A stretch of 64,000 bases of DNA, from IMG/VR virus record IMGVR_UViG_3300003877_000001, positions 62,001 through 126,000 of that record; one strand, given 5' to 3'. Shown piece after piece: positions 47,003 to 63,434 of this stretch. The notes beneath the pieces are model-generated. The model was not told the origin of the DNA, made no database searches, and worked only from the letters and a program-made list of their open reading frames with translations. The first letter of the stretch is position 1; each line of letters begins with the position of its first letter. Made by a program: the position numbers and the translations under genes.

Positions 47003-47018
47003 AAAACTTGCATCTTAA

Positions 47019-47045
47019 CTAAACCTTTTTTATATTTGCAACGTA
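47019..47045 (+). promoter_or_regulatory. overlapping Bacteroidota -7 box (TATATTTG) and ECF-like AACC-N16-CGTA promoter
   Basis: CTAAACCTTTTTTATATTTGCAACGTA upstream of leader 2. Confidence 0.6.
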
Positions 47046-47089
47046 TTTAATATAGAACAAAGTATAATAACTTTAAAATAATTAAAAAG

Positions 47090-47209
47090 ATGAAGAATTC
47101 AAGAACAATTTTAAACACCAATATGGAAGCCATGTTATGGTCAGTTGCGGAAGCAGTTGAGGTGGACGATTTGTGTCTAGGGTCTTCAGGAGAAGGTGAA
47201 TTAGTTTAA
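47090..47209 (+). CDS. leader peptide MKNSRTILNTNMEAMLWSVAEAVEVDDLCLGSSGEGELV
   Basis: 39 codons; M/E/A/L/W/S/V/D control segment; terminator follows. Confidence 0.82.
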   Translation: MKNSRTILNTNMEAMLWSVAEAVEVDDLCLGSSGEGELV

Positions 47210-47234
47210 CTACTAAAACATCCAAACGAAATTG

Positions 47235-47264
47235 AAGACCCAATCCTAACAGATTGGGTTTTTT
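47235..47264 (+). terminator. intrinsic terminator of attenuator 2
   Basis: AAGACCCAATC-CTAACA-GATTGGGTTTT-TT. Confidence 0.9.
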
Positions 47265-47286
47265 GTTTTATAAGGGTTTAGAAATT

Positions 47287-47430
47287 ATGATAAGAGTTTA
47301 TATTGAAGATAAAGAAAAGGGTGTAGTATTTGCGTACATAAAAGATGTACCAGCAATTTGCAGCCAAGGTAAAACAAAAGAAGAAGTCGATAAAAAGATT
47401 GATAAGTATTTTGAAGTGATTAAAAAGTAA
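47287..47430 (+). CDS. orphan HicB-family antitoxin-like protein (47 aa)
   Basis: MIRVYIEDKEKGVVFAYIKDVPAICSQGKTKEEVDKKIDKYFEVIKK matches the HicB N-terminal pattern (P...SQG.T.EE). Confidence 0.7.
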   Translation: MIRVYIEDKEKGVVFAYIKDVPAICSQGKTKEEVDKKIDKYFEVIKK

Positions 47431-47432
47431 AT

Positions 47433-47502
47433 GGGTCTGATGCTAAAGGCAGGTCGTTGGTTTTGCATACCAAACGTTTCGGTTCGATTCCGACAGTATC
47501 CA
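47433..47502 (+). tRNA. tRNA-Ala(UGC), irregular acceptor stem
   Basis: TTGGT-TTTGCAT-ACCAA; G3.U70. Confidence 0.7.
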
Positions 47503-47637
47503 CAATAAAGTTATTTGACGTATTGTTTATTAAAAAATTATTTGTGAAGAGAGAGCAGAGACTCTTGACGGCAGCACTATAATGGTGGCTTCGAACAAAT
47601 ACATGTCGTGTGTATTGTCCGTGATAAGCAAATATAT

Positions 47638-47709
47638 GGGGAGTTAGTATAATGGCTATTATTATTGACTTGCACTCAATGGATAAGGGTTCGACTCCCT
47701 TACTCTCCA
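47638..47709 (+). tRNA. tRNA-Ala(UGC)
   Basis: ATTGA-CTTGCAC-TCAAT; G3.U70, A73. Confidence 0.93.
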
Positions 47710-47711
47710 CT

Positions 47712-47883
47712 AATGTTGAAAGGAAGCGGTTGTTTATAGACTATCGACAGCATAAGATTAGTATCGGCTTTATGTGTAATATGACGACTCTAACATGGTC
47801 TGGCTTTTCCAACATCATATATTGAAACCGTACTCGTACTGTTAGATTACACCAATATGTGAAAGAACTATAAACTCAACATT
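47712..47883 (+). ncRNA. rod-like structured RNA candidate
   Basis: Nested pairings AATGTTGA/TCAACATT, GTTTATAG/CTATAAAC, GTGTAAT/ATTACAC, TCTAACA/TGTTAGA. Confidence 0.6.
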
Positions 47884-47888
47884 TATTT

Positions 47889-47960
47889 GCTCGGTTCGTC
47901 TAACGGTTAGGACGGGTGGTTTTCAGCCATCAGATAGGGGTTCGATTCCCCTACCGAGTA
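47889..47960 (+). tRNA. tRNA-Glu(UUC)
   Basis: GGTGG-TTTTCAG-CCATC. Confidence 0.92.
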
Positions 47961-48011
47961 CTTTTGGTCGTTTTTGTACCTTTGTAATATTTATAATTAA
48001 ACATTGTAAAT

Positions 48012-48656
48012 ATGGCAAGAAAACAAAAGAAATATCATTATTTGTATAAGACAACAAATAATTTAAACGGTAAATACTATTATGGTATGCATAGTACTGA
48101 TGATTTAAATGATGGTTATTATGGTTCAGGTAAAAGATTAAGATATTCGATTAATAAATATGGTAAAGAAAATCATAGTGTTGAAGTATTAGAGTTCTTT
48201 GAAAATAGAATTGATTTAAAAAATAAAGAAAAGGAGATTATTAATTTAAATGAAATTGCCAAAAAAGATTGTATGAATTTAGTTGTTGGTGGTGGTGGTG
48301 GATTAATAGGATTATCTGAAGACAAAAGAGAAAATATTCGTAATGGTGCATCTAAATTTTTAAAAGAAAAATGGAAAGACCCTTCATATAGAAAAATGCA
48401 AATAAAACTTTCTTCGGAAAGAATAAAAAAAACACATAAAGAAGGAAAACTTAAATATAATAATTTTAAAAATAAATATCATAATGAAGAAAGTAAAAGA
48501 AAAATGAGTGAATCTAGCAAGGGAATGGGAAAAGGGAAAAGTAACTCCCAATATGGAACATGTTGGATAACAAAAAATGATGTTAATAAAAAAATTAAAT
48601 TATTTGATTTAAATGACTATATAAAAAACGATTGGATTAAAGGTCGTATAATATAA
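48012..48656 (+). CDS. GIY-YIG (Seg-like) homing endonuclease with NUMOD3
   Basis: YLYKTTN..NGKYYYGMH..DGYYGSG; HNEESKRKMSES. Confidence 0.9.
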   Translation: MARKQKKYHYLYKTTNNLNGKYYYGMHSTDDLNDGYYGSGKRLRYSINKYGKENHSVEVLEFFENRIDLKNKEKEIINLNEIAKKDCMNLVVGGGGGLIGLSEDKRENIRNGASKFLKEKWKDPSYRKMQIKLSSERIKKTHKEGKLKYNNFKNKYHNEESKRKMSESSKGMGKGKSNSQYGTCWITKNDVNKKIKLFDLNDYIKNDWIKGRII

Positions 48657-48663
48657 ATTTTGA

Positions 48664-48727
48664 TCCTTACCTTTGGTTTGGATTCTACAAAGGTTTTCAA
48701 CGTTGAACCCGTTAATCAACGTTGTTT
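48664..48727 (+). repeat. double-hairpin spacer element, copy 1
   Basis: TACCTT..GGT.TGGATT...AAAGGTTTTCAACGTTGAACC...TCAACGTTGTTT. Confidence 0.85.
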
Positions 48728-48729
48728 AT

Positions 48730-48805
48730 GATCGGTTCGTCTAATGGAACTAGGATAGGTGGGGTCAAAAGCCACCAGATAGAGGTTTAAATCCTTTACC
48801 GATTA
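48730..48805 (+). tRNA. tRNA-Glu-like paralog with aberrant 9-nt anticodon loop
   Basis: Body similar to tRNA at 47889; GGTGG-GGTCAAAAG-CCACC; T loop TTTAAAT. Confidence 0.6.
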
Positions 48806-48806
48806 C

Positions 48807-48940
48807 TATGAATTGTTAGTGGTGGAACAGGTATACACTATCACCGTTGAAGGTGGTTTGTAGGGGTTATAGAAAACCCCTGCTGCATGGTAACATGTGG
48901 GACATCCCTTGTAGGTTCGAGTCCTACCTAGTGGTTCATA
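48807..48940 (+). ncRNA. enlarged tRNA-like RNA (Ser/Leu-type D arm, two extra hairpins)
   Basis: 13-bp terminal stem, GTGGAACAGGTATACAC, GTAGG-TTCGAGT-CCTAC. Confidence 0.75.
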
Positions 48941-48946
48941 ATTTAT

Positions 48947-49019
48947 TGGGTGTTCGTCTAGTGGCAAAGGCATCTGTTTTACATGCAGAATATCGTGGGT
49001 TCGAGTCCCACACACCCAA
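48947..49019 (+). tRNA. tRNA-Val(UAC)
   Basis: TCTGT-TTTACAT-GCAGA. Confidence 0.92.
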
Positions 49020-49023
49020 CTGG

Positions 49024-49088
49024 TCTTTACCTTATGGTCTGGATTTAAAAAAGGTTTTCAACGTTGAACCAGATATCAACGTTGTTTT
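49024..49088 (+). repeat. double-hairpin spacer element, copy 2
   Basis: Near-identical to 48664-48727. Confidence 0.85.
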
Positions 49089-49092
49089 ATAT

Positions 49093-49165
49093 TCGCTCTT
49101 GGTGATCAACGGTAACATAGCAGTCTCCAAAACTGAAGATGAAAGTTCAAATCTTTCAGGGCGAG
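49093..49165 (+). tRNA. tRNA-Trp(CCA)
   Basis: GCAGT-CTCCAAA-ACTGA; G73. Confidence 0.88.
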
Positions 49166-49199
49166 CAAAGTAGTTGAAAATCAACTAGTTATAACATAA

Positions 49200-49270
49200 C
49201 GTCCATTGGTGTAATGATAACATGATCGGTTGTCTCCCGATTGCCGAGGGTTTGATTCCCTCATGGACGG
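49200..49270 (+). tRNA. tRNA-Asp(GUC)
   Basis: ATCGG-TTGTCTC-CCGAT; G73; pyrimidine at position 37. Confidence 0.8.
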
Positions 49271-49272
49271 CA

Positions 49273-49671
49273 AAATTTTGTAGTCGTTCTTGTGTTGGTA
49301 AATATAGAGCAAATAAAGTAAAAAAATCAAATAAAGTTAGACGAAGTAAAAATGAAATCTATTTTGCGGATTTATGTATAGAATATTTTAAAAATGTTGA
49401 AACTAATGAAAAAATTTTTAATGGATGGGATGCTGATGTTATTATTCACGATATTAAAATAGCAATTTTATGGAATGGTAAATGGCATTATGAAAAAATA
49501 ATCAAAAATCATTCAGTAAAACAAGTACAAAATAGGGATAGATTGAAATTAATTGAAATTAAAAATTATGGATATGAACCGTACATAATAAAAGATATGG
49601 GTTCATATAATAAAAAGTTTGTTGAAGAACAATTCAAAGAATTTATAAATGCCGATGTCGCCAAGTGGTAA
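49273..49671 (+). pseudogene. Vsr-like endonuclease, 5' end missing
   Basis: FCSRSC, SKNEI.F, WDADVII...AILWNG.WHY, RD..K; the listed start lies inside tRNA-Asp. Confidence 0.6.
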
Positions 49672-49722
49672 GGCACATTTCTCATAAGAATGTATACGAG
49701 TGTTCGATTCACTCCATCGGTA
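49651..49722 (+). tRNA. tRNA-Met(CAU) (elongator, or Ile2)
   Basis: CATTT-CTCATAA-GAATG. Confidence 0.88.
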
Positions 49723-49740
49723 CAAAATTTTTAAATAAAT

Positions 49741-49766
49741 TGTAACCTTTTAAAAAAGTTTACGTA
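49741..49766 (+). promoter_or_regulatory. ECF-sigma-like promoter TGTAACC-N15-CGTA
   Basis: Identical copy at 50223; variants at 46577, 54617, 63075 (+) and 15510, 44035 (-). Confidence 0.65.
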
Positions 49767-49776
49767 TTATAAATAT

Positions 49777-50220
49777 ATGGTTGATAAAGAAATATGTAGA
49801 TTTAAATATGAAGATATTGAATATCAAATAAGCCATTTAATATTTCAATATGGTAATATTAAAATTTCAATGCCTAGTATATTAATTACAACCAAATCTT
49901 CTAATAGTAAAAGAAGTACATATGTAAGTAAAACTGATGGACATTATAACTTAGTTGGATTGAATAACCCAATTAAATTAATTAGAAAAATTAGTAATAT
50001 TTACAATGATGAACTTAAATCTTTTGATTATGTTTGTTTTAGTGCACATACAGATGCAACAGATAAATGTACTGAAGTATATGGTGGCATTCTTAATAAA
50101 ATGGGATTTGTTAAATTATTAAATAATAAATATTATCATTTTTATAGTAGAAAAGATAAAAAACTAAAACGTAAAGAAGTTGTTAAAATTTTTAAAGATT
50201 TTGAAATTTATTTACATTAA
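49777..50220 (+). CDS. hypothetical protein
   Basis: ORF flanked by direct repeats of the promoter motif. Confidence 0.55.
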   Translation: MVDKEICRFKYEDIEYQISHLIFQYGNIKISMPSILITTKSSNSKRSTYVSKTDGHYNLVGLNNPIKLIRKISNIYNDELKSFDYVCFSAHTDATDKCTEVYGGILNKMGFVKLLNNKYYHFYSRKDKKLKRKEVVKIFKDFEIYLH

Positions 50221-50264
50221 TATGTAACCTTTTAAAAAAGTTTACGTATATTTGAAATATAAAC

Positions 50265-50336
50265 GGAGCATTGGTCTAACGGCTAGGATATATGACTATC
50301 ACTCATAGGGTAGGGGTTCGATTCCCCTATGTTCCG
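50265..50336 (+). tRNA. tRNA-Asp(AUC)
   Basis: TATGA-CTATCAC-TCATA; GGAGCAT/ATGTTCC stem, G73. Confidence 0.88.
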
Positions 50337-50346
50337 CACTGGTCAT

Positions 50347-50465
50347 TAAAGTATGGTGTAATGTGCACGATACTTCCATGTACCGACCAACGATAGCCTA
50401 TTAGTATGGTGACAATAGGTTGGCAACAGAAGTAAAGGATTAAGGTTAAATTCCTTATTACTTGA
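50347..50465 (+). ncRNA. tRNA-like RNA with extended anticodon arm
   Basis: D arm TGGTGTAATGTGCAC, TACTTC/GAAGTA enclosing about 50 nt, T arm TAAGG-TTAAATT-CCTTA. Confidence 0.55.
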
Positions 50466-50481
50466 AGACCTAAAAAAATAT

Positions 50482-50621
50482 GCTGTAATGGAATGAAGTG
50501 AAAACGATAAAGTATAATGCATTGAAATATCGTGGAAACTATTAGTCACTAGCGATAATTGGCATTAATCATTTAACATAGGGGTAATTTCCTATTATGG
50601 GTTCGAGTCCCCAATATGGCA
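50482..50621 (+). ncRNA. enlarged tRNA-like RNA
   Basis: GCTGTA/TATGGC ends; GGG-TTCGAGT-CCC T arm. Confidence 0.55.
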
Positions 50622-50706
50622 CAAAATTATGGTATGATGGAATTGGTATACATGTGGGTGTGACCTTCGAAAGAATAGGTGCAGATCAAACGGATATGTT
50701 AACAAA

Positions 50707-50808
50707 TGAAGTAAAAGGGTTAAATGATGATTTAAATGTCTTGGCTTAAAATAGTTTCAATATTTAAATATGTAGTTTATCGTTAAGGTTCAATTCCTTA
50801 TACTTCAC
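50707..50808 (+). ncRNA. enlarged tRNA-like RNA
   Basis: TGAAGTA/TACTTCA ends; TAAGG-TTCAATT-CCTTA; ATTTAAAT long arm. Confidence 0.6.
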
Positions 50809-50909
50809 AAAAGTCTGGCAGAAGTATGCGATAGGTACGACAATACCGATAGCAGAAAATGAAGGACACATTGAACTCGAAGCATTGTCGTGTGGAGATA
50901 GTAAATGTT

Positions 50910-50981
50910 TAACTAGTGGACAAGTGGTAAAGTCGCCCCTTTTAAATGGGGAGAACGTGGGTTCGAATCCTACCTAGTTAA
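50910..50981 (+). tRNA. tRNA with UAA-containing loop, short variable region (identity uncertain)
   Basis: TAACTAG/CTAGTTA; CCCC-TTTTAAAT-GGGG; GTGGG-TTCGAAT-CCTAC. Confidence 0.7.
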
Positions 50982-51209
50982 CTAAACTTCTGTGATGTGG
51001 AAGAATTGAAGTTCATGTTTGTTTAATATTTGGGTCGCTCCTGAATACTGACAATAAAGAATAGTTTATATTTGAGGTGAGTACGTATTAACCGATATAT
51101 GAAGTTACTATTTTGAATGAACGCACTTCGCACTCGTCAAAGGGAGAGAAAGCAGGTTCGATACCTGTCTACGCTACAAATATTATATCAAACGGATATA
51201 ATTTAAAAT

Positions 51210-51364
51210 TAACTAATGGCAGAGTGGCTTAATGCGGATGTCTAGTTCTATATGATTGATAGAGGGTGAACTTCTTTATCTTTTGCTCATGAACGGAAAC
51301 AATTACCCTGATTACGAGAAGCAAATATCGAAAGGGGTCATAGGTTCGAATCCTATTTAGTTAG
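51210..51364 (+). ncRNA. enlarged tRNA-like RNA with insertion in the anticodon loop
   Basis: TAACTAA/TTAGTTA; TGGCAGAGTGGCTTAATGC; GATGT/ATATC; ATAGG-TTCGAAT-CCTAT. Confidence 0.78.
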
Positions 51365-51397
51365 CAATATTATATCAAACGGATATAATGAAAATAT

Positions 51398-51616
51398 GAG
51401 GATGTGGTGGAAAGGTAAACACGCTTGTTTTAGAATAAGTACAAAGTTCATTTGGGAATAAATAATACTGATGAAGAGATGAATACCATAATGCTTACTG
51501 CTTAGTTGAACCAAGTTACCCTTCGGGATATGTCGGTAAAATAGAAATCGAAATCTAAATGATAGTAGAGGTAAGAGAGAAAGTCTGGTTTGAGGGTTCG
51601 AGTCCTTCCATCTTCA
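51398..51616 (+). ncRNA. 219-nt tRNA-Leu(UAG)-like RNA with giant variable region
   Basis: GAGGATG/CATCTTC+A; TGGTGGAAAGGTAAACAC; CTTG-TTTTAGAA-TAAG; GAGGG-TTCGAGT-CCTTC. Confidence 0.78.
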
Positions 51617-51655
51617 CTAAATTATATCAAACGGATATAATAAAAATTGAAATAT

Positions 51656-52009
51656 GGGGGTAACAGGAATTGACAGGATACGATAGGTAGACGGTGCAAG
51701 TATGAGGAAATTGCTCTACTCATTAAAAATAGGTAATGAACGTTTAAGTGGCGAAGCACTTGCAATGGCAGCATAACCGAAAGGTTTTTGTACCATTCGA
51801 GATACCACCAACTAGGTAGGTGTTCTCATAGATACTGATCACGTAAAGAGATCAAAAAATGTTGTGGAACATAAAACCAAAAAGTCTAATGTAATAAAGT
51901 GTTTGTAAATAAAAAACATAATGACTTAAAAATAATAAACAAACTAAACTTGTGAATGACTTTTTATTTGTAATATAACTGGACAGGAGTTCAAGTCTCC
52001 TTACTTCCA
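51656..52009 (+). ncRNA. ssrA: tmRNA, tag (A)GEALAMAA
   Basis: GGGGGTA..GGAATTGAC 5' end; tag ORF 51750-51776; TAAACTTGTGAA; GGAC-AGGAG-TTCAAGT-CTCCT-TACTTCC-A with G3.U70. Confidence 0.95.
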
Positions 52010-52015
52010 CAATAT

Positions 52016-52112
52016 GGTGATCTATTGGTATCTACACGCCTTTCATCGGGAAGTAGAAGGATAACTTTAATGATGAATATGAGTTATATTGGTTCGAATC
52101 CCCTGATCGCCA
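52016..52112 (+). ncRNA. non-canonical tRNA-like RNA
   Basis: GGTGATC/GATCGCC+A; GG-TTCGAAT-CC; two internal hairpins. Confidence 0.55.
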
Positions 52113-52130
52113 CTTAAATAAAAAACTAAT

Positions 52131-52544
52131 ATGGATATTGAAAAGTTTAAAAGGGATATGAAAGAAGATATGGAAAATCCTGATGGTTTCTTTGCTAGAT
52201 TGGCAAAAAAAAATGCTAATCTTGAGAAAAGATATAATAAATTTGAAAAATGGTTAGAAACAAACGAGTTTGAACCTATTTTCCAAAAATTGCTAGAAAA
52301 AAATGGTGATGAAAGAAGTACATATTGTTTTAATAAAGGACATGAAAAAAATGGTACACCTTTAATGGAATTTCTTTGTGGCTATATAACTACTAGAATT
52401 GAAACTGTTGAAAATGAAAAATTTAGTGGTGATTTTAGTTCTGGTATTTGGTTTTTTAAAGATTATTGGTTTCAATTAATTTGTGGTCAAGGATGTTTTT
52501 GGAAAATATATAATAAAGATTTTGAATGTATTGAACACGTATAG
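52131..52544 (+). CDS. hypothetical protein
   Basis: ORF track; ..GQG.F.. motif. Confidence 0.6.
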   Translation: MDIEKFKRDMKEDMENPDGFFARLAKKNANLEKRYNKFEKWLETNEFEPIFQKLLEKNGDERSTYCFNKGHEKNGTPLMEFLCGYITTRIETVENEKFSGDFSSGIWFFKDYWFQLICGQGCFWKIYNKDFECIEHV

Positions 52545-52613
52545 TGGAGCAATACTTGAAATGGTTAGAAGCCTTAAATGAAAATAGAGAATTAAGAATA
52601 AGATTAAATAAAG

Positions 52614-52811
52614 ATGTTTAATATAGGTTTTTTAATTGATAGATATTGGTGGGATATTAAACATAATAAACCACATAATTCTTTAATTGAAGGAGATACC
52701 TCTACAACAACTAACTTAGGATATTTTAAATTAGTAGATGATGAATATAAATTAACAGAGGAAGGTATTAAAAGTTATAAAAAAATGAGAAGAAATAATG
52801 AGAAAGAATAA
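52614..52811 (+). CDS. hypothetical protein
   Basis: ORF track. Confidence 0.4.
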   Translation: MFNIGFLIDRYWWDIKHNKPHNSLIEGDTSTTTNLGYFKLVDDEYKLTEEGIKSYKKMRRNNEKE

Positions 52812-52855
52812 AATACATAGTGAACGATTATCCACCACTGAAGCAGATTTAAGAT

Positions 52856-52930
52856 GCCAGCGTGGTGGACGTGGGAATACACGACATTTTTAAGCGATGT
52901 TTTTCGAGGGTTCGAGTCCCTCCGTTGGTA
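52856..52930 (+). tRNA. tRNA-Leu(UAA) with short variable loop
   Basis: GCCAGCG/CGTTGGT+A; ACATT-TTTAAGC-GATGT; variable loop TTTTC. Confidence 0.82.
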
Positions 52931-52981
52931 CTAATTTATTTTCGAATAGGCACACATAAAAAAATAAATCTAAAAAAGAAA

Positions 52982-53239
52982 ATGAGTGCAATAAACAACA
53001 GGGAGTATCCTAAATGTATATTTTGTGGAAAATTTTGCTTTAAACATAAAAGAAAATATTGTTCAAGAGATTGTTATAATAAAGACATGGAATTAAATAT
53101 TCCTAAAGTACCTGAATTATTAAAAATGTTTAAAAAATATAAAACATTTGTTAGGGTTGGGAAAGAATTTAATGTAAGTGATAATGCTGTTAGAAAATGG
53201 TGTATTAAATATGGTATATTAGAAATGATTAATAAATAA
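52982..53239 (+). CDS. Zn-finger/HTH protein (homing endonuclease remnant)
   Basis: CIFCG..YCSRDC; VGKEFNVSDNAVRKW; start re-called to MSAIN because the listed start lies in a tRNA. Confidence 0.55.
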   Translation: MSAINNREYPKCIFCGKFCFKHKRKYCSRDCYNKDMELNIPKVPELLKMFKKYKTFVRVGKEFNVSDNAVRKWCIKYGILEMINK

Positions 53240-53245
53240 TATAAA

Positions 53246-53509
53246 ATGAATAAAACAGAAATAAAGAAAGCATTATATAAGCAAAAGCCAAAGGCTGAAT
53301 TTACACATATTAGAAGAGGTATTGCTTATTATAATACAATATTAAGAATAGAAGAAGAACCATATAGTCATTCAGTATTTTTTGAAATACCTGTTGATGA
53401 TATGGGTGATGCAGACTTTGATAAGCAAATGGATGCAAAATTACTTAATCGTTGGATTGTTGATATACTCATTTTAACAAAAAAAGAAGGTGATTTAAAA
53501 ATGCCCTAA
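53246..53509 (+). CDS. conserved phage hypothetical protein
   Basis: EIKKALYKQKPKA...F.IP..DMGDA.F...M.AKLL.RW. Confidence 0.65.
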   Translation: MNKTEIKKALYKQKPKAEFTHIRRGIAYYNTILRIEEEPYSHSVFFEIPVDDMGDADFDKQMDAKLLNRWIVDILILTKKEGDLKMP

Positions 53510-53587
53510 TGGTGAAAAGGTAGACACGGCAGGTTCAAACCCTGTTGCTAATAAACTGGCGTGTAGGTTCGAATCCTACTTAGGGTA
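53503..53587 (+). tRNA. tRNA-Leu(CAA)
   Basis: GCAGG-TTCAAAC-CCTGT; long variable arm; A73. Confidence 0.93.
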
Positions 53588-53588
53588 C

Positions 53589-53906
53589 ATGAATGGAAAA
53601 GATGATATTGTTGGTGCAAAATTTGCTTTAGTTAAAGAAGGTGATTTAGTTGTTCATATGAGTAGGGAATCTTATGATGATTTAATGCATGAAGTTATTG
53701 AAGAGTTAAGAAAACAAATTATGATTAAAGTAAAAGAAGTTACAAAGTATATGGATGGTGGAACAACTAAATATATTGATGAAAAAGGTAATGAATATTT
53801 TAAAGACAATAGATTAGGTACAAAAACTAAAGGTAAAATTTTTGATAAATATCCTAAAGAAGAAGATGCTAAAATATTAGATGTTGAACTTGAAATATTA
53901 TTGTGA
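53589..53906 (+). CDS. hypothetical protein
   Basis: ORF track; DGGT motif. Confidence 0.5.
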   Translation: MNGKDDIVGAKFALVKEGDLVVHMSRESYDDLMHEVIEELRKQIMIKVKEVTKYMDGGTTKYIDEKGNEYFKDNRLGTKTKGKIFDKYPKEEDAKILDVELEILL

Positions 53907-54096
53907 TGAACAAAGACATTTAGTGTGTGTTCCTTATTCAAAAGAGAACCTACATTTGATGGCTGATGATTTAAACATCAAAAGATGTTGGTTTCATAAA
54001 GATCATTATGATATACCTAAAAGAAGAATAAAAGAAATAAGTGCAAAGTGCACAATAATTAATAGTAAAGAAATAGTTAAAATAATAAGAAAATGA
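53881..54096 (+). CDS. DUF4031-like protein
   Basis: HL....LH.MA..L.IKR.WF...HYDI. Confidence 0.65.
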   Translation: MLNLKYYCDEQRHLVCVPYSKENLHLMADDLNIKRCWFHKDHYDIPKRRIKEISAKCTIINSKEIVKIIRK

Positions 54097-54186
54097 ACAG
54101 AATTAACAACATATTTGAAAGTGAACAAGAGATTAATTCTGCTCTAGTGATATAGTATAACGGTCACCGAGCAGACGTAAAACTAT

Positions 54187-54261
54187 GCTCGGTTGGACAA
54201 CGGTAGGTTAAGTCACCACCCTTTCAAGGTGGTATAACGGGTTCGACCCCCGTACCGAGTA
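54187..54261 (+). tRNA. tRNA-Glu(UUC)
   Basis: CCACC-CTTTCAA-GGTGG. Confidence 0.93.
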
Positions 54262-54500
54262 CAAAAATAATAAATTTAAAGAGTCATATTGATTAGTGGG
54301 TTGGGTTTGATTTCGACTGTTACTCTGATCAGGGGTGTTATTAGCGGTTTAAAACGTGAACACATTTGTAAGTATTTGGTAGGTAAGTTCGACTCTTGCT
54401 ACTTATTAACAACACTAATTAATTTAACTTTTAAAATATGATTAGTTATCATATAAAAATATACTTAACTATTAACATATTGGTAGTTATAATGAAATAT

Positions 54501-54586
54501 TGTGAGTTGGAGAAGTTGGTATCTCGCTGGTTTCATAAGCCAGAGTCCCTACGGGGTTTACGGGGGTTCGAATCCCTCACTCGCTA
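54501..54586 (+). tRNA. initiator-like tRNA(CAU) with extra variable hairpin
   Basis: 1:72 mismatch; CTGGT-TTCATAA-GCCAG; variable CCC-TACG-GGG. Confidence 0.85.
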
Positions 54587-54817
54587 CTAAAAAGAATTAA
54601 AAATAAATAAGAAAATTGTAACATATTAAAAATATTTACGTATATTTGTAATATAACAGACAACAAAAGTTCCTATAATTTATATTTGGATAAAAAATAC
54701 TTTTCGTCTGTTTTTTTATAAATTAAAACATAAAGGTAAATGATGTTCCTATAAAACTCAATAGGGGAAACCCTATTTTTACTGTAAATACATCTCACCT
54801 TTTTAAAAAATTAAATT

Positions 54818-56572
54818 ATGAAAACTTTAGAACTATTTAATGCGGTTGTAAAAAAAGATACAAAAGATAATGTTTTTGTATCAGAAGATGGATATATTAT
54901 CGAATCTGGTGCTTTATGGGCAAAAGATAGAATTGTAACCTATTATAATAGTCGTAGATTAAATGGTAATGATTTAAATAAAACATTTCATAAATCATGG
55001 TTAAAAATAAAAAATAGTTCAAGATATGAACTATTGGTTGATCAAATAAAACATTATATATCTACATATGGTAGTGGATTTAAAGATGATGTTTATATCC
55101 CTGATGAAGTATTAGATATTTCAGGATTAAAAATATCATTTAAAGTTGTTAAAGCATATACTAAAGATGAATTAATTGATAAATCATTATCATTACTTCA
55201 ATCTGGTATTGCTTTGAAAGAAGAAACAATAAATGATTTATTATCAATTCTTGTAGATGAACTTGATTATGAATTTACTGGTAAAGAAAATATTCGTAAC
55301 AAAGAAGCAATAATTAAAATTGCAGATATATATGGGGTATTACCAATAGATACTATGGAGTTTTTTAGATATATTATCTATCGTACAACAGGACAATCAT
55401 TATTAATTAAAAATTATAAAATGATTGAATTGATAAAAGATAGTAATTATAATCCATCTGCACAATTTAAGAAATTTGGATTAGAAAAACTTTCTGAAAT
55501 ATTTAATAGATTTAAGCCGTTATTTTTAGCTTTTAAACCTAAATGTAGTGGTACTATTAATAGAATTTCAAAGTTATCTAAAAAATATCATAAGCCACTT
55601 CTTAGTAATCCATTAAATGAAGTAACTTCGGTTACATTTAATGAAGGTGATGATCACTGGTTAGATAATGCAACACCATTTGCTTTATTTAAAGCATTGT
55701 CTGCTTGTTGGACAAGAATGAATGGACAAGATGCTTTTGTATATAGAATTAGAAATGGTAAATCATTTGCTAAGATGAATTCTACTGATGCAGGTATTGC
55801 AGGATATAATTATGGACATATTCTTAATTATATTAAAAATAGATTTGATCTTTCAGGTAAGAAAATATTTCTTCCAGAAGATGTAGAATATGCTTTACCA
55901 ACATCTGAAAAGATGTACGTAGGTAATGTTCCAACAGGAACAAGATTCTATGGTAATGCTCTTGCTGTTGGTATTTATTGGAAAAACTCTTGGGGTGCAA
56001 CTGACCTTGATTTATCTGGTTTGAATATCGGTGGAAAAGTCGGTTGGAATTCAGATTATAAACAAGGTGGATCATTGTATTTCTCTGGTGATATTACCAA
56101 CGCACCTAATGGTGCTGTTGAGTATCTTTATGCAAATAGAGGACTTAGTGAACCAACTTTGGTAATGAATAATGTATTTAGTGGAAACCCTGATTCAGAA
56201 TTCAAGATCATCGTAGGTAAAGGTGATAATATCAATAAGAATTATATGATGAACCCTGAAAAGTTGTTCGTGGATATTAAGACACAATCAGTTCAAACTC
56301 AAAGTGTGTTAGGTATATTTCTTCCAGTTGGTAACGAGAGACAATCTTTTGTTATTTTGAACTTCGGTTCTGGTAGAGAACATATTTCTAGTTATGGTGA
56401 AGTTGCAAATATAACAACAAAGGCACTTTATCAACAATGGAACAATGCACTTACTTTGAGAGAAGTAATTGGAAAATTAGGTGTTGAATTTGTTACTGAT
56501 CCTGAAAAGGCAGATAATGATTTAAGTTTAAATACAATTGAAAAAGATTCTATAATGAATCTTTTTATATAA
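54818..56572 (+). CDS. stress-related protein with C-terminal TerD-like motifs
   Basis: GIYW....DLDLS...GWN....FSGDITNAP.GA.EY. Confidence 0.6.
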   Translation: MKTLELFNAVVKKDTKDNVFVSEDGYIIESGALWAKDRIVTYYNSRRLNGNDLNKTFHKSWLKIKNSSRYELLVDQIKHYISTYGSGFKDDVYIPDEVLDISGLKISFKVVKAYTKDELIDKSLSLLQSGIALKEETINDLLSILVDELDYEFTGKENIRNKEAIIKIADIYGVLPIDTMEFFRYIIYRTTGQSLLIKNYKMIELIKDSNYNPSAQFKKFGLEKLSEIFNRFKPLFLAFKPKCSGTINRISKLSKKYHKPLLSNPLNEVTSVTFNEGDDHWLDNATPFALFKALSACWTRMNGQDAFVYRIRNGKSFAKMNSTDAGIAGYNYGHILNYIKNRFDLSGKKIFLPEDVEYALPTSEKMYVGNVPTGTRFYGNALAVGIYWKNSWGATDLDLSGLNIGGKVGWNSDYKQGGSLYFSGDITNAPNGAVEYLYANRGLSEPTLVMNNVFSGNPDSEFKIIVGKGDNINKNYMMNPEKLFVDIKTQSVQTQSVLGIFLPVGNERQSFVILNFGSGREHISSYGEVANITTKALYQQWNNALTLREVIGKLGVEFVTDPEKADNDLSLNTIEKDSIMNLFI

Positions 56573-56719
56573 ATATTAAAGACGATTAGTAACACGTTGG
56601 CTTCGTGTTGAAATTGTGGGATAACGTGCCTGATAGCTGAAAAGCAAAAAGAACCACCCACTGAAAGGAAAGTTCGCAACTAAACCTGCTTTTCTAGTTT
56701 GAAACGTAAACTAGTATAT

Positions 56720-56803
56720 CGTGAGTTGGAGAAGTGGCATCTCGCTGTCCTCATAAGGTAGAGTCCCTACGGGTTTACGAAGGTTCGAGTCCTTCACTCG
56801 CTA
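56720..56803 (+). tRNA. initiator-like tRNA(CAU) with extra variable hairpin, copy 2
   Basis: C1:U72; CTGTC-CTCATAA-GGTAG; variable CCC-TACG-GG. Confidence 0.85.
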
Positions 56804-57460
56804 CTAAACTATAAGAATATGAAAAATAACATACCGCTTGGAAGCGGAATACATGTTAAATACTGTTACAGGTTCGTTGAGAACTTCACGTTTTTCTATC
56901 TCGTTAATCGAACAAGGTTAATCACCTTTTGCGGATCACGAATAGAATTTATCGGTGATTCCTCTCCCCCTTTATAGTCAAGATACTAATTATACTTGTG
57001 GATGTGCATGTATTAGAATGATATTAAATCATTTTTATGCACGATCCATTTAGAGGTGCTAAATCAAATTTCCAAATAAAGAAGTTTCTTAGAAATAATT
57101 GGAACATTAATCATAAAAAATATAATGTATCAGATAGTTATTATTCCGATTTAGTATTTGATCCAAAGATGGATAGAAAACGTTATTGGTTAGCATATAA
57201 GAAGGGGGATTAATTCTTCTTTCTTTTTAAAAATTTTTAAACTATATTTGTATTATGAGAAGTTTTGATTAAAGCAAAAAAATAATGGATAATACAATTG
57301 GAATATTTTTAATAACAAAGTTGTGAAAGTATGGTTGAAATTGATGGTTAAAAACCATTTCCAGAAGTAGATAAATTTAAATGGGTTGATTTTGATGATG
57401 CATTAGAATTAATTCATGATACACAAGTAATAGCATTAAATGAATATATAAGAAAATAAA

Positions 57461-63204: not shown

Positions 63205-63288
63205 ATGACAAAAGTTAATACATATAAGAAATATAAAAACTATCCAGATACTGGATCAGGTATTCTATGTACTAACTTTGGTGGCTAA
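63205..63288 (+). CDS. leader peptide MTKVNTYKKYKNYPDTGSGILCTNFGG
   Basis: 27 codons; AAT ACA TAT AAG AAA TAT AAA AAC TAT run; terminator then tRNA-Tyr. Confidence 0.82.
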   Translation: MTKVNTYKKYKNYPDTGSGILCTNFGG

Positions 63289-63310
63289 AGCCATAAAGTT
63301 TAAAATATAG

Positions 63311-63344
63311 AAACCCTGATTCAGAAATGAGTCAGGGTTTTTTT
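63311..63344 (+). terminator. intrinsic terminator of attenuator 3
   Basis: AAACCCTGATTCA-GAAA-TGAGTCAGGGTTT-TTTT. Confidence 0.92.
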
Positions 63345-63353
63345 ATGCCATAT

Positions 63354-63434
63354 TGTACGGTTGAACAGGTGGTGAGTTCCGCACACTGTAAATGTGCTGC
63401 TTCGGCTATGGGGGTTCGATTCCCTTCCGTACAA
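63354..63434 (+). tRNA. tRNA-Tyr(GUA)
   Basis: GCACA-CTGTAAA-TGTGC; variable hairpin GC-TTCG-GC; A73. Confidence 0.93.

What the first reader, a model, noticed from the sequence alone, without database searches (positions are those of the whole stretch)
47287..47430. Orphan HicB-like antitoxin is the first gene released by attenuator 2
This unlisted 47-aa ORF matches the HicB toxin-binding domain pattern, with no DNA-binding tail and no hicA nearby. Its position directly after the terminator means it would be made when translation stalls. It may neutralise a host HicA RNase, acting as stall-triggered anti-defence.
Basis: partly seen in the sequence, partly recalled or inferred. Interest (0 to 1): 0.7.

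Follow-up and report, generated by a model that had tools for sequence, protein, structure and literature searches.

The report
Orphan mini-HicB heading phage tRNA operon
A 47-residue gene in a 326-kb phage is a real, conserved, stripped-down copy of the HicB antitoxin with no toxin partner, and it is the first gene after a ribosome-stall-sensing switch that guards a block of phage tRNA genes, so it is probably a counter-defence protein made when host translation falters.

Summary
ORF 47287-47430 (47 aa) is a real gene: relatives show dN/dS of 0.02-0.19, and a profile search finds 51 family members. It folds with high confidence as beta-beta-beta-alpha. Its best structural matches are HicB N-terminal domains, although its Pfam scores are below threshold. 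It has no DNA-binding tail, and no HicA was found in the 325,854-bp phage genome.

The family has two size classes. In all four 64-66-aa members whose context I examined, a HicA-fold partner follows. One of these lies on a Bacteroidetes chromosome. The 42-52-aa members are orphans that mostly sit in phage tRNA arrays.

A complex prediction of the phage protein with one such HicA-fold partner passed (0.65; best control 0.00).

The upstream "attenuator 2" also looks real. It has a leader ORF, a terminator, and a leader segment complementary to the terminator's 5' arm. This pairing is maintained with different sequences in other lineages.

All four attenuators in this genome have leader peptides rich in the amino acids whose tRNAs lie downstream. 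Examples are QPQPQHQHQ before Pro/His/Gln tRNAs and EAMLWSVAEAVEVDDL before Ala/Glu/Leu/Val/Trp/Asp/Met tRNAs.

Neutralisation of a host HicA remains an inference. The host, the target and stall-dependent read-through are all untested.

The parts
47008..47049 (+). Promoter-like element (TTGCAT ... AACC-T-run ... TATATTTG CA ACGTATTTA) ahead of the leader
   Evidence: Seen directly in the sequence. The same element stands before the attenuator at genome 144,274 and in L002, L008, L012, L013 and L021. Its function as a promoter is inferred.
47090..47209 (+). Leader ORF of attenuator 2, 39 aa: MKNSRTILNTNMEAMLWSVAEAVEVDDLCLGSSGEGELV
   Evidence: Its core is 16/17 residues from {A,E,V,W,M,D,L}, the amino acids of the tRNAs downstream. 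Only 3 places in the genome reach this, out of 108,643 windows. The leader is almost frozen at nucleotide level: 1-5 differences in 99 nt, while the neighbouring ORF has dS 0.35-0.88.
47179..47190 (+). Antiterminator strand inside the leader ORF (AGGGTCTTCAGG), complementary to 47231-47242
   Evidence: Duplex energy is -16.8 kcal/mol. It was reached by 1/1000 and 1/2000 shuffled leaders. In the close group 93% of cells are paired, and L004 carries a double change that shares a column with a terminator pair.
47234..47270 (+). Intrinsic terminator hairpin (12 bp, loop 6) followed by a T-tract
   Evidence: In the close group 96% of cells are paired, with two pairs changed on both sides.
47287..47430 (+). 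Orphan mini-HicB gene, 47 aa (the finding)
47439..47501 (+). Decayed tRNA-Ala(UGC)-like element directly after the ORF
   Evidence: Rfam tRNA scores 24.2 bits, below the 29-bit threshold, and the D-arm is shortened. In L002, L003 and L012 an intact tRNA-Ala sits here and contains the ORF's stop codon.
47508..47524 (+). Conserved motif GTTATTTGACGTATTG after the first tRNA or tRNA-like element
   Evidence: It is conserved in the window, L002-L004, L006, L008 and at genome 144,692. Its role is unknown. It could be an internal promoter, a processing site or a binding site.
47638..56804 (+). tRNA array downstream: Ala, Glu, Leu, Val, Trp, Asp, Met, Asp, Leu, Leu, Leu, Glu, Met, Met, interspersed with small ORFs and a SegB-like homing endonuclease

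Best explanation
ORF 47287-47430 encodes a 47-residue, single-domain relative of the HicB antitoxin. It keeps only the toxin-binding beta-beta-beta-alpha core, has no DNA-binding part, and has no partner toxin in the phage. It derives from a family whose 64-66-aa members are encoded immediately upstream of a HicA-fold toxin, in phages and in at least one Bacteroidetes chromosome. In a clade of jumbo phages with about 27% GC, the shortened orphan has become the first cistron of a tRNA operon. That operon starts with a promoter-like element, a 39-codon leader ORF and an intrinsic terminator. A segment near the end of the leader can pair with the 5' arm of the terminator. Inferred step: when ribosomes stall on the leader's Ala/Glu/Val/Trp/Met/Asp/Leu codons, this pairing forms, RNA polymerase reads through, and the mini-HicB is made together with the tRNAs for those same amino acids. 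Inferred step: the protein most likely binds and blocks a HicA-fold RNase toxin of the host, probably a member of Bacteroidota, as an orphan-antitoxin counter-defence.
For: Real gene: homologues exist and dN/dS is 0.02-0.19.

Fold: pLDDT is 93.7. HicB N-domains and UPF0150 proteins top the PDB and AFDB searches. NCBI and JGI name family members as HicB.

Origin in a toxin-antitoxin pair: the 66-aa relatives in L010, L016, L020 and L023 are each followed by a conserved 87-103-aa gene. That gene folds alpha-beta-beta-beta-alpha, and its best matches are HicA toxins (1whz, 6hpb_A, 4p78_C, 6g26_E, 5yrz_B).

Binding: complex prediction of ORF47 with the L016 HicA-fold protein scored 0.65 against a best control of 0.00. 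The three runs agree in at least 93% of contacts, and the partner's pLDDT is at least 84. In calibration this mark was reached by 51 of 78 solved complexes and 2 of 108 mismatched pairs. Seven of the ten (near-)invariant family positions lie in the predicted interface (p about 0.01).

Orphan status: no HicA was found in the genome.

Attenuator: a terminator is present. The antiterminator complementarity is reached by only 16, 1, 0 and 1 of 2000 shuffles in the four attenuators of this genome. It is kept with different sequences in L013, L006, L021 and L015. L004 shows a three-way compensatory change.

Leader-array match: QPQPQHQHQ precedes Pro, Pro, His, Gln, His, Gln tRNAs. The A/E/V/W/M/D/L core precedes array 2. 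NNNTYISRISNLLTSS...GNGTFNGRR precedes Thr/Gly/Leu/Ile/Asn/Phe/Ser/Arg tRNAs. YKKYKNY precedes Tyr and three Lys tRNAs. The true leader-array pairing scores best of 24 permutations.

Conserved module: leader, terminator, mini-HicB and tRNAs occur together in five lineages that share only 54-64% protein identity.
Against: Sequence profiles stay below Pfam's thresholds. A profile search of PDB sequences found nothing.

The mini form lacks the roughly 20 C-terminal residues that all paired relatives have.

The complex pass may reflect the model's memory of solved HicAB complexes. It also used a toxin from another element, not one from the unknown host.

Host assignment rests only on a 70%-identical 225-bp match to Tenacibaculum phages, the promoter style, and the Bacteroidetes cassette.

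Minimum-free-energy folding always keeps the terminator and does not by itself show a switch.

The conserved motif at 47508-47524 could be an internal promoter. That would limit the attenuator's reach to the ORF and the first tRNA.

The leader senses codon-specific stalling, which classical mRNA-cleaving HicA would not cause.

No transcript data could be found.
Confidence: 0.55

Rival explanations
1. The mini-HicB is not an anti-toxin device. It is an RNA-binding accessory protein of the tRNA operon, for example binding tRNA precursors or shielding tRNAs, using the RNase H-like/dsRBD-like surface of the fold.
For: Orphan members sit in or at tRNA arrays in at least seven independent contexts: the window group, L006, L008, L013, L021, L014 and L018/L019. 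In L014 and L018 the gene lies inside an array with no leader. In L002, L003 and L012 the ORF's stop codon lies inside the first tRNA. One structural neighbour, 3kwr, is labelled a putative RNA-binding protein.
Against: The conserved residues coincide with the predicted toxin-binding surface. The net charge is only about +2. The 66-aa relatives examined are paired with HicA-fold genes. tRNA regions of large phages are general dumping grounds for small accessory genes. Two orphans, L007 and L017, have no tRNA on their short contigs.
Confidence: 0.2
2. The gene is a true antitoxin for a toxin encoded elsewhere in the same phage. That toxin would be either a HicA too divergent to recognise or an unrelated one, so the gene is not an orphan acting on the host.
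For: The family's own HicA-fold partner is invisible to Pfam, so divergent toxins can be missed. The phage has hundreds of unannotated small ORFs.
Against: Pfam HicA and the partner profile both find nothing in 326 kb. In all paired relatives the toxin gene is directly adjacent, whereas here tRNAs follow. Module synteny without a toxin is conserved across five lineages.
Confidence: 0.08
3. The hairpin is an ordinary terminator of a small upstream gene or sRNA. ORF47 is made by constitutive leak-through or by a phage polymerase that ignores it, so expression is not stall-controlled.
For: Thermodynamic folding always favours the terminator. No expression data exist. The leader peptide is conserved at amino-acid level across lineages (AMLW...C), which could mean the peptide itself has a function.
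Against: Four of four attenuators have a significant antiterminator complement at the same relative place. Their leaders are enriched in exactly the amino acids of their own arrays. There is a three-way compensatory change. Synonymous sites of the leader are frozen. There is no room for a promoter between the T-tract and the ATG, which are 17 nt apart.
Confidence: 0.12
4. The ORF is a decaying remnant of a toxin-antitoxin cassette with no present function.
For: It is shorter than its paired relatives. A doubtful 25-aa look-alike follows the third attenuator.
Against: There is strong purifying selection. The intact ORF is conserved over lineages with 54-64% identity.
Confidence: 0.03

Closest known systems
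HicB antitoxin N-terminal domain of HicAB type II toxin-antitoxin systems (E. coli 6hpb, Burkholderia pseudomallei 6g1c/6g1n/6g26, Yersinia pestis HicB3 4p78)
   Same: It shares the three-stranded sheet plus helix core. It is predicted to bind a HicA-fold protein through the sheet and helix face. Longer family members are encoded next to a HicA-fold gene.
   Different: It has only 47 aa. It lacks the final strand and the ribbon-helix-helix or HTH DNA-binding domain. It has no adjacent toxin. It scores below Pfam thresholds. It sits in a phage tRNA operon.
Stand-alone UPF0150 proteins (Thermus thermophilus TTHA1013 1wv8, TTHA0281 2dsy, 2yzt)
   Same: They are small single-domain proteins of the same fold. 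PF21748 is the top Pfam hit for most family members.
   Different: Those are cellular, 67-80 aa and of unknown function. This protein is shorter and phage-borne.
Phage orphan antitoxins used as counter-defence: T4 Dmd against RnlA/LsoA (from my own knowledge) and the DarG-like AdfA of T4-like phages against DarTG1 (PMC11825919)
   Same: A phage carries an antitoxin-like gene without its toxin. The presumed use is to disarm a host toxin-antitoxin defence.
   Different: The antitoxin family differs, and no experiment has been done here. In addition, expression here appears to be tied to a translation-sensing switch.
Leader-peptide transcription attenuators of amino-acid operons (trp, his, leu, thr, ilvGMEDA, pheA; established knowledge)
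   Same: Both have a short leader ORF rich in codons related to the operon's product, an intrinsic terminator, and a mutually exclusive antiterminator pairing.
   Different: The regulated genes are tRNA genes plus a small protein gene, in a phage. The leaders combine up to seven or eight amino-acid types to match multi-tRNA arrays. Two literature searches found no report of such attenuators before tRNA arrays.
Phage tRNA genes as counter-defence against tRNA-cleaving immunity (PMC10264068, PMC11555353, PMC12409363)
   Same: Phage tRNA arrays are proposed to replace host tRNAs lost to defence nucleases. An antitoxin-like gene beside them fits a counter-defence island.
   Different: Those studies describe no stall-sensing control and no HicB-like partner.

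Membership tests
HicB antitoxin / UPF0150 superfamily | N-terminal partial RNase H-like fold (beta-beta-beta-alpha, usually followed by a fourth strand) | tested here: met
   The AF2 model has pLDDT 93.7, with strands at 3-8, 13-18 and 21-28 and a helix at 31-46. HicB and UPF0150 structures top the PDB, AFDB and BFVD searches. The fourth strand is absent. Foldseek E-values are weak (0.003-1) because the domain is small.
HicB antitoxin / UPF0150 superfamily | Profile match above the curated cut-off (PF15919 HicB_lk_antitox, PF21748 UPF0150, PF05534) | tested here: not met
   ORF47 scores 12.5 bits against a cut-off of 27.3. Relatives score 12.6-22.1 bits. NCBIfam gives nothing. Scans of the genome with PF15919 and PF21748 give nothing. 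However, PF21748 is the consistent top hit, and NCBI and JGI name family members HicB.
HicB antitoxin / UPF0150 superfamily | Adjacent hicA toxin gene | tested here: not met
   None lies next to ORF47 or anywhere in the 326-kb genome. The feature is met for the 66-aa relatives L010, L016, L020 and L023, whose neighbour has a HicA fold.
HicB antitoxin / UPF0150 superfamily | C-terminal DNA-binding domain for autoregulation (RHH or HTH; not universal) | tested here: not met
   The protein ends at residue 47, with the helix.
HicB antitoxin / UPF0150 superfamily | Binds and neutralises a HicA toxin | tested here: inconclusive
   Complex prediction with the L016 HicA-fold protein scored 0.65 against a best control of 0.00. 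In calibration 51/78 solved and 2/108 mismatched pairs reach the mark. The runs agree in at least 93% of contacts, and the partner's pLDDT is at least 84. The model supports binding but does not show it. Neutralisation is not testable here.
Leader-peptide transcription attenuator | Short translated leader with codons tied to the operon's product | tested here: met
   The leader is 39 codons, and its core is 16/17 from the array's amino-acid set. The same rule holds at the three other attenuators of the genome and in L013 and L021. Translation itself is not shown.
Leader-peptide transcription attenuator | Intrinsic terminator between the leader and the first regulated gene | tested here: met
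   A 12-bp hairpin plus T-tract lies at 47234-47270. In the close group 96% of cells are paired, with compensatory changes.
Leader-peptide transcription attenuator | Alternative antiterminator pairing that overlaps the terminator's 5' arm | tested here: met
   47179-47190 pairs with 47231-47242 at -16.8 kcal/mol, reached by 1/2000 shuffles. The pairing is kept with other sequences in L013, L015 and L021. Covariation within the close group alone is modest: 93 of 500 shuffles reach it.
Leader-peptide transcription attenuator | Pairing that sequesters the antiterminator strand when the leader is not being translated or is fully translated | tested here: inconclusive
   The MFE fold pairs 47181-47190 with the first bases of the leader ORF. 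However, constrained folds do not produce a clear switch.
Leader-peptide transcription attenuator | Read-through that depends on ribosome stalling | not testable with these tools
   No RNA data exist for this phage. One RNA-labelled run holds only fragments of relatives.

The most novel reading that the evidence does not exclude
The mini-HicB and the tRNA array are two arms of one inducible counter-defence operon. In this reading, a HicA-fold toxin of the Bacteroidota host damages the translation apparatus, perhaps the tRNAs themselves. The phage leader detects the resulting codon-specific stalling. Read-through then delivers both replacement tRNAs and a toxin blocker. This would be the first translation-sensing attenuator found to control tRNA genes and an anti-defence protein, and it would imply a tRNA-directed activity for some HicA-fold toxins.
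Probability: 0.12. Interest if true: 0.92.

Novelty: new variant of a known kind. Interest (0 to 1): 0.8.

Why it matters
Orphan antitoxins are an emerging class of phage counter-defence, but no HicB-type example has been characterised. This family offers a clean natural experiment. Its long forms are paired with a HicA-fold toxin, and its short forms are orphaned in phage tRNA operons.

The context matters more than the gene. The gene sits behind one of four leader-peptide attenuators whose leaders match the amino acids of the tRNA genes they precede. If read-through responds to stalling, phages regulate their tRNA supply by measuring decoding capacity. My literature searches found no description of such control for tRNA genes. 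That would make the 50-year-old question of what phage tRNAs are for directly testable, because one could identify which stress opens the switch. It would also define what is co-induced with the tRNAs.

Tried and rejected
- A profile search of PDB sequences with the family alignment gave only chance hits.
- NCBIfam gave nothing.
- PHROGs gave only phrog_6476, of unknown function, at E 0.026.
- tblastn against 50,697 GenBank phage records found no match.
- The IMG/VR scan found only an identical copy, L005.
- A scan of 185,579 species genomes with the mini-HicB pattern found nothing. The Bacteroidetes cassette was found only through the toxin partner.
- The alternative TTG start at 47254 (58 aa) was rejected. 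It lies inside the terminator stem, and all homologues start at the ATG.
- P0013 and P0014 from the exhaustive search are repetitive, unrelated proteins and were discarded.
- I considered whether the upstream 47090-47270 region is an sRNA gene rather than a leader. Rfam gives only chance-level hits. The peptide is conserved across lineages whose DNA differs, so a translated leader is preferred.
- Searches of RNA runs gave no usable transcript evidence. One RNA-labelled run, probably DNA, held only fragments from relatives.
- MFE and constrained folding gave no clear thermodynamic switch, because the terminator always wins. The case for the switch therefore rests on comparative evidence.
- The 25-aa ORF after the third attenuator resembles the N-terminus of the family (KRVYLKFD), but the family profile does not detect it. 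I treat it as doubtful.

Full report
**Setting.** The window is bases 62,001-126,000 of a 325,854-bp viral contig that IMG/VR's CheckV estimate rates as complete. The contig has 27.5% GC and carries 46 tRNA genes by ARAGORN. The best DNA holder is a hydrothermal-vent metagenome. Neighbouring ORFs hit phage families, including a SegB-like homing endonuclease lying between tRNAs. The only nucleotide similarity to isolated phages is short. One such match is a 225-bp stretch, 70% identical, to the Tenacibaculum jumbo phages PTm1 and PTm5.

**The ORF is real.** ATG 47287 to TAA 47430 gives a 47-aa product, MIRVYIEDKEKGVVFAYIKDVPAICSQGKTKEEVDKKIDKYFEVIKK.
- Five metagenomic proteins are 85-91% identical.
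- An exhaustive HMMER search adds seven relatives at 49-61% identity.
- A profile search finds 51 members.
- Against five close homologues, differences concentrate at third codon positions (for example 11 of 13). dN/dS is 0.02-0.19, with dS of 0.35-0.88.
- The gene is single-copy in the genome.

**It has the HicB fold.** Sequence profiles are sub-threshold.
- PF21748 UPF0150-like scores E 0.15 for ORF47.
- The same family is the top hit for six of seven relatives, with E from 1.4e-4 to 0.14. PF15919 HicB_lk_antitox hits one relative at E 0.0026.
- PDB sequences and NCBIfam give nothing.

The AlphaFold2 model, built on a 13-sequence alignment, is confident: pLDDT 93.7, with three strands and one helix.
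- Foldseek puts HicB N-terminal domains and UPF0150 proteins at the top of the PDB list: 6g1c, 6g1n, 1wv8, 2dsy, 2yzt, 6u0i, 6hpb_B and 4p78_A.
- HicB-like clusters top the AlphaFold DB list, with TM by query up to 0.83.
- Many small phage proteins of this fold exist in BFVD. Most are unnamed and a few are labelled HicB.
- Foldseek E-values are weak because the domain is only 47 residues. The fold assignment therefore rests on the consistency of the hits.
- The protein ends with the helix. It has no fourth strand and no DNA-binding domain.

**It comes from a toxin-antitoxin pair but is an orphan here.** The family has two size classes.
- All four 64-66-aa members whose context I read are followed at once by a conserved 87-103-aa gene. 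They are L010, L016, L020 and L023.
- That partner is invisible to Pfam. It folds alpha-beta-beta-beta-alpha. Its best structural matches are HicA toxins: 1whz, 6hpb_A, 4p78_C, 6g26_E and 5yrz_B, plus many AFDB clusters named HicA.
- L020 is a 532-kb contig of a Bacteroidetes MAG, and NCBI names its protein a HicB-family antitoxin. L016 and L023 are phage or prophage contexts, with tape-measure and terminase genes nearby.
- The 42-52-aa members have no such neighbour.
- In the phage genome, Pfam HicA_toxin and a profile of the partner both find nothing.

**Predicted binding.** ORF47 folded together with residues 1-80 of the L016 HicA-fold protein reached the tool's mark.
- The score was 0.65 in all three runs, against a best control of 0.00.
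- The runs agree in at least 93% of their contacts, and the partner's pLDDT is at least 84.
- In calibration, 51 of 78 solved complexes and 2 of 108 mismatched pairs reached the mark.
- Solved HicAB complexes exist, so the pass may be partly memory. It shows likeness to a HicA-binder, not binding in a cell.
- The interface residues of ORF47 are 6, 8, 11, 13, 15, 17, 22-28, 37, 41 and 44. They include 7 of the 10 invariant or nearly invariant family positions (p about 0.01).

**The upstream element behaves like an attenuator.** Between a promoter-like element (47008-47049) and the ORF lie a 39-codon ORF (47090-47209) and a 12-bp hairpin with T-tract (47234-47270).
- The ATG of ORF47 follows the T-tract by 17 nt. 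Transcription of the ORF must therefore pass the hairpin.
- Bases 47179-47190, inside the leader ORF, are complementary to 47231-47242, which cover the 5' arm of the hairpin. The duplex energy is -16.8 kcal/mol, reached by 1 of 2000 shuffled leaders.
- In L004 a C-to-T change in the arm is matched by G-to-A changes in both of its alternative partners.
- In more distant lineages (L013, L006, L021) the terminator has a different sequence, and the leader carries the matching complement (GTCGGG against CCCGAC) at the same relative position.
- The leader is almost invariant at nucleotide level among close relatives, with 1-5 differences in 99 nt. The adjacent ORF47 has accumulated many silent changes. 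This is expected if codon identity and RNA pairing both matter.
- Simple minimum-energy folding always keeps the terminator, so it neither proves nor disproves a switch.

**Leaders match the tRNAs they precede.** The genome holds four such units, named here by their sensor amino acids.
Its leader MKRLVNIVGQPQPQHQHQMLNGENMSS precedes tRNAs Pro, Pro, His, Gln, His, Gln.
Its leader core EAMLWSVAEAVEVDDL precedes Ala, Glu, Leu, Val, Trp, Asp, Met and further tRNAs. A 16-of-17 match to that amino-acid set occurs at only three places among 108,643 windows of the genome's ORFs.
- Tyr/Lys unit, window 63205-63344. Its leader MTKVNTYKKYKNYPDTGSGILCTNFGG precedes tRNA-Tyr and three tRNA-Lys.
- Thr/Gly/Leu unit, outside the window at genome 144,330-144,512. 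Its leader MKNNNTYISRISNLLTSSICGNGTFNGRRAKIGSNVDIVIS precedes Thr, Gly, Leu, Ile, Asn, Phe, Ser and Arg tRNAs.
- The antiterminator complement is significant in all four: 16, 1, 0 and 1 of 2000 shuffles reach it.
- The true pairing of leaders with arrays scores best of the 24 possible pairings.
- In L013 the leader core ELVVAEAAALLWAVDDMDVEW is 21 of 21 from the array set. In L021 the core is 18 of 19.
- Two literature searches found no description of leader-peptide attenuation of tRNA genes.

**How the ORF relates to the switch.**
- The module of leader, terminator, mini-HicB and Ala/Glu/Val... tRNAs recurs in the window group and in L006, L008, L013 and L021.
- Other orphans lie inside tRNA arrays without a leader (L014, L018/L019).
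- Two of the other three attenuators of this genome have no such ORF. The third is followed only by a doubtful 25-aa look-alike.
- The ORF is therefore cargo of this operon, not a component of the switch.
- A conserved motif (47508-47524) follows the first tRNA or tRNA-like element in several lineages. If it is an internal promoter, the attenuator would govern mainly ORF47 and the first tRNA.

**Interpretation.**
- Shown: a real gene, a HicB-type fold, orphan status, descent from hicB-hicA-like pairs, and a position directly behind a hairpin that has a conserved alternative pairing and a leader matched to the array.
- Inferred: stall-dependent read-through, a Bacteroidota host, and binding to a host HicA-fold toxin.

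It also fits the view of phage tRNAs as counter-defence (PMC10264068, PMC11555353). One caution applies: the leader senses a shortage of particular decoding capacities, which is not what a general mRNA-cleaving HicA would cause. The main rival is an RNA- or tRNA-related role, suggested by the tight association of the orphans with tRNA arrays.

Noticed in passing
window 43833-43690 (minus strand), with tRNAs at 43644-43094: A second leader-peptide attenuator. Its leader MKRLVNIVGQPQPQHQHQMLNGENMSS is followed by a hairpin with T-tract at 43724-43690. Leader segment 43776-43766 is complementary to the hairpin's 5' arm. The tRNAs Pro, Pro, His, Gln, His, Gln follow directly, with no ORF in between.
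   Followed up: partly
window 63205-63344, tRNA-Tyr at 63354: Another attenuator. Its leader MTKVNTYKKYKNYPDTGSGILCTNFGG is followed by the hairpin AGAAACCCTGATTCA...TGAGTCAGGGTTTTTTT. The antiterminator complement was reached by 0/2000 shuffles. Downstream lie tRNA-Tyr and, just past the window end, three tRNA-Lys.
   Followed up: partly
L015 (genome 144,200-145,000; outside the window): Another attenuator with the same promoter-like element. Its leader is rich in N, T, I, S, R, L, G and F and precedes an array of Thr, Gly, Leu, Ile, Asn, Phe, Ser and Arg tRNAs. After its terminator comes a 25-aa ORF, MNKRVYLKFDVLNSVGTDVSGKCPH. Its start resembles the mini-HicB family, but the family profile does not detect it.
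   Followed up: partly
window 47439-47501: A decayed tRNA-Ala(UGC)-like element begins 8 nt after the ORF's stop codon. It scores 24.2 bits, below the Rfam threshold, and is conserved in L004 and L011. In L002, L003 and L012 an intact tRNA-Ala stands there and the ORF's stop codon lies inside it. RNase P processing would then leave the ORF's mRNA without a stop codon.
   Followed up: partly
window 47508-47524; also genome 144,692; L002-L004, L006, L008: A conserved motif, GTTATTTGACGTATTG, directly follows the first tRNA or tRNA-like element of the array. It is related to the ACGTATTTA core of the promoter-like elements before the four leaders. It could be an internal promoter, a processing signal or a protein-binding site.
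   Followed up: no
window 48012-48656: A GIY-YIG SegB-like homing endonuclease gene (phrog_314, E 3e-34) lies between tRNA-Glu and tRNA-Leu, as in the T4 tRNA region.
   Followed up: no
window 50265-50337; genome 157,717-157,787 (outside the window); L021 10577-10646: ARAGORN calls a tRNA-Asp with the unusual anticodon ATC. It also calls a CTA-anticodon (amber-reading) tRNA in this genome and in relative L021. I looked for no evidence of stop-codon recoding, and no alternative genetic code was used.
   Followed up: no
L008 1690-2202: A TnpB/Cas12f-like gene fragment (PF07282) lies at the end of the tRNA array of a related phage contig.
   Followed up: no
L020 2329-2949 (Bacteroidetes MAG): The chromosomal hicB-like/hicA-like pair lies next to a gene for a NYN-domain protein, a predicted RNase. 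This hints at a small RNA-targeting defence cluster.
   Followed up: no
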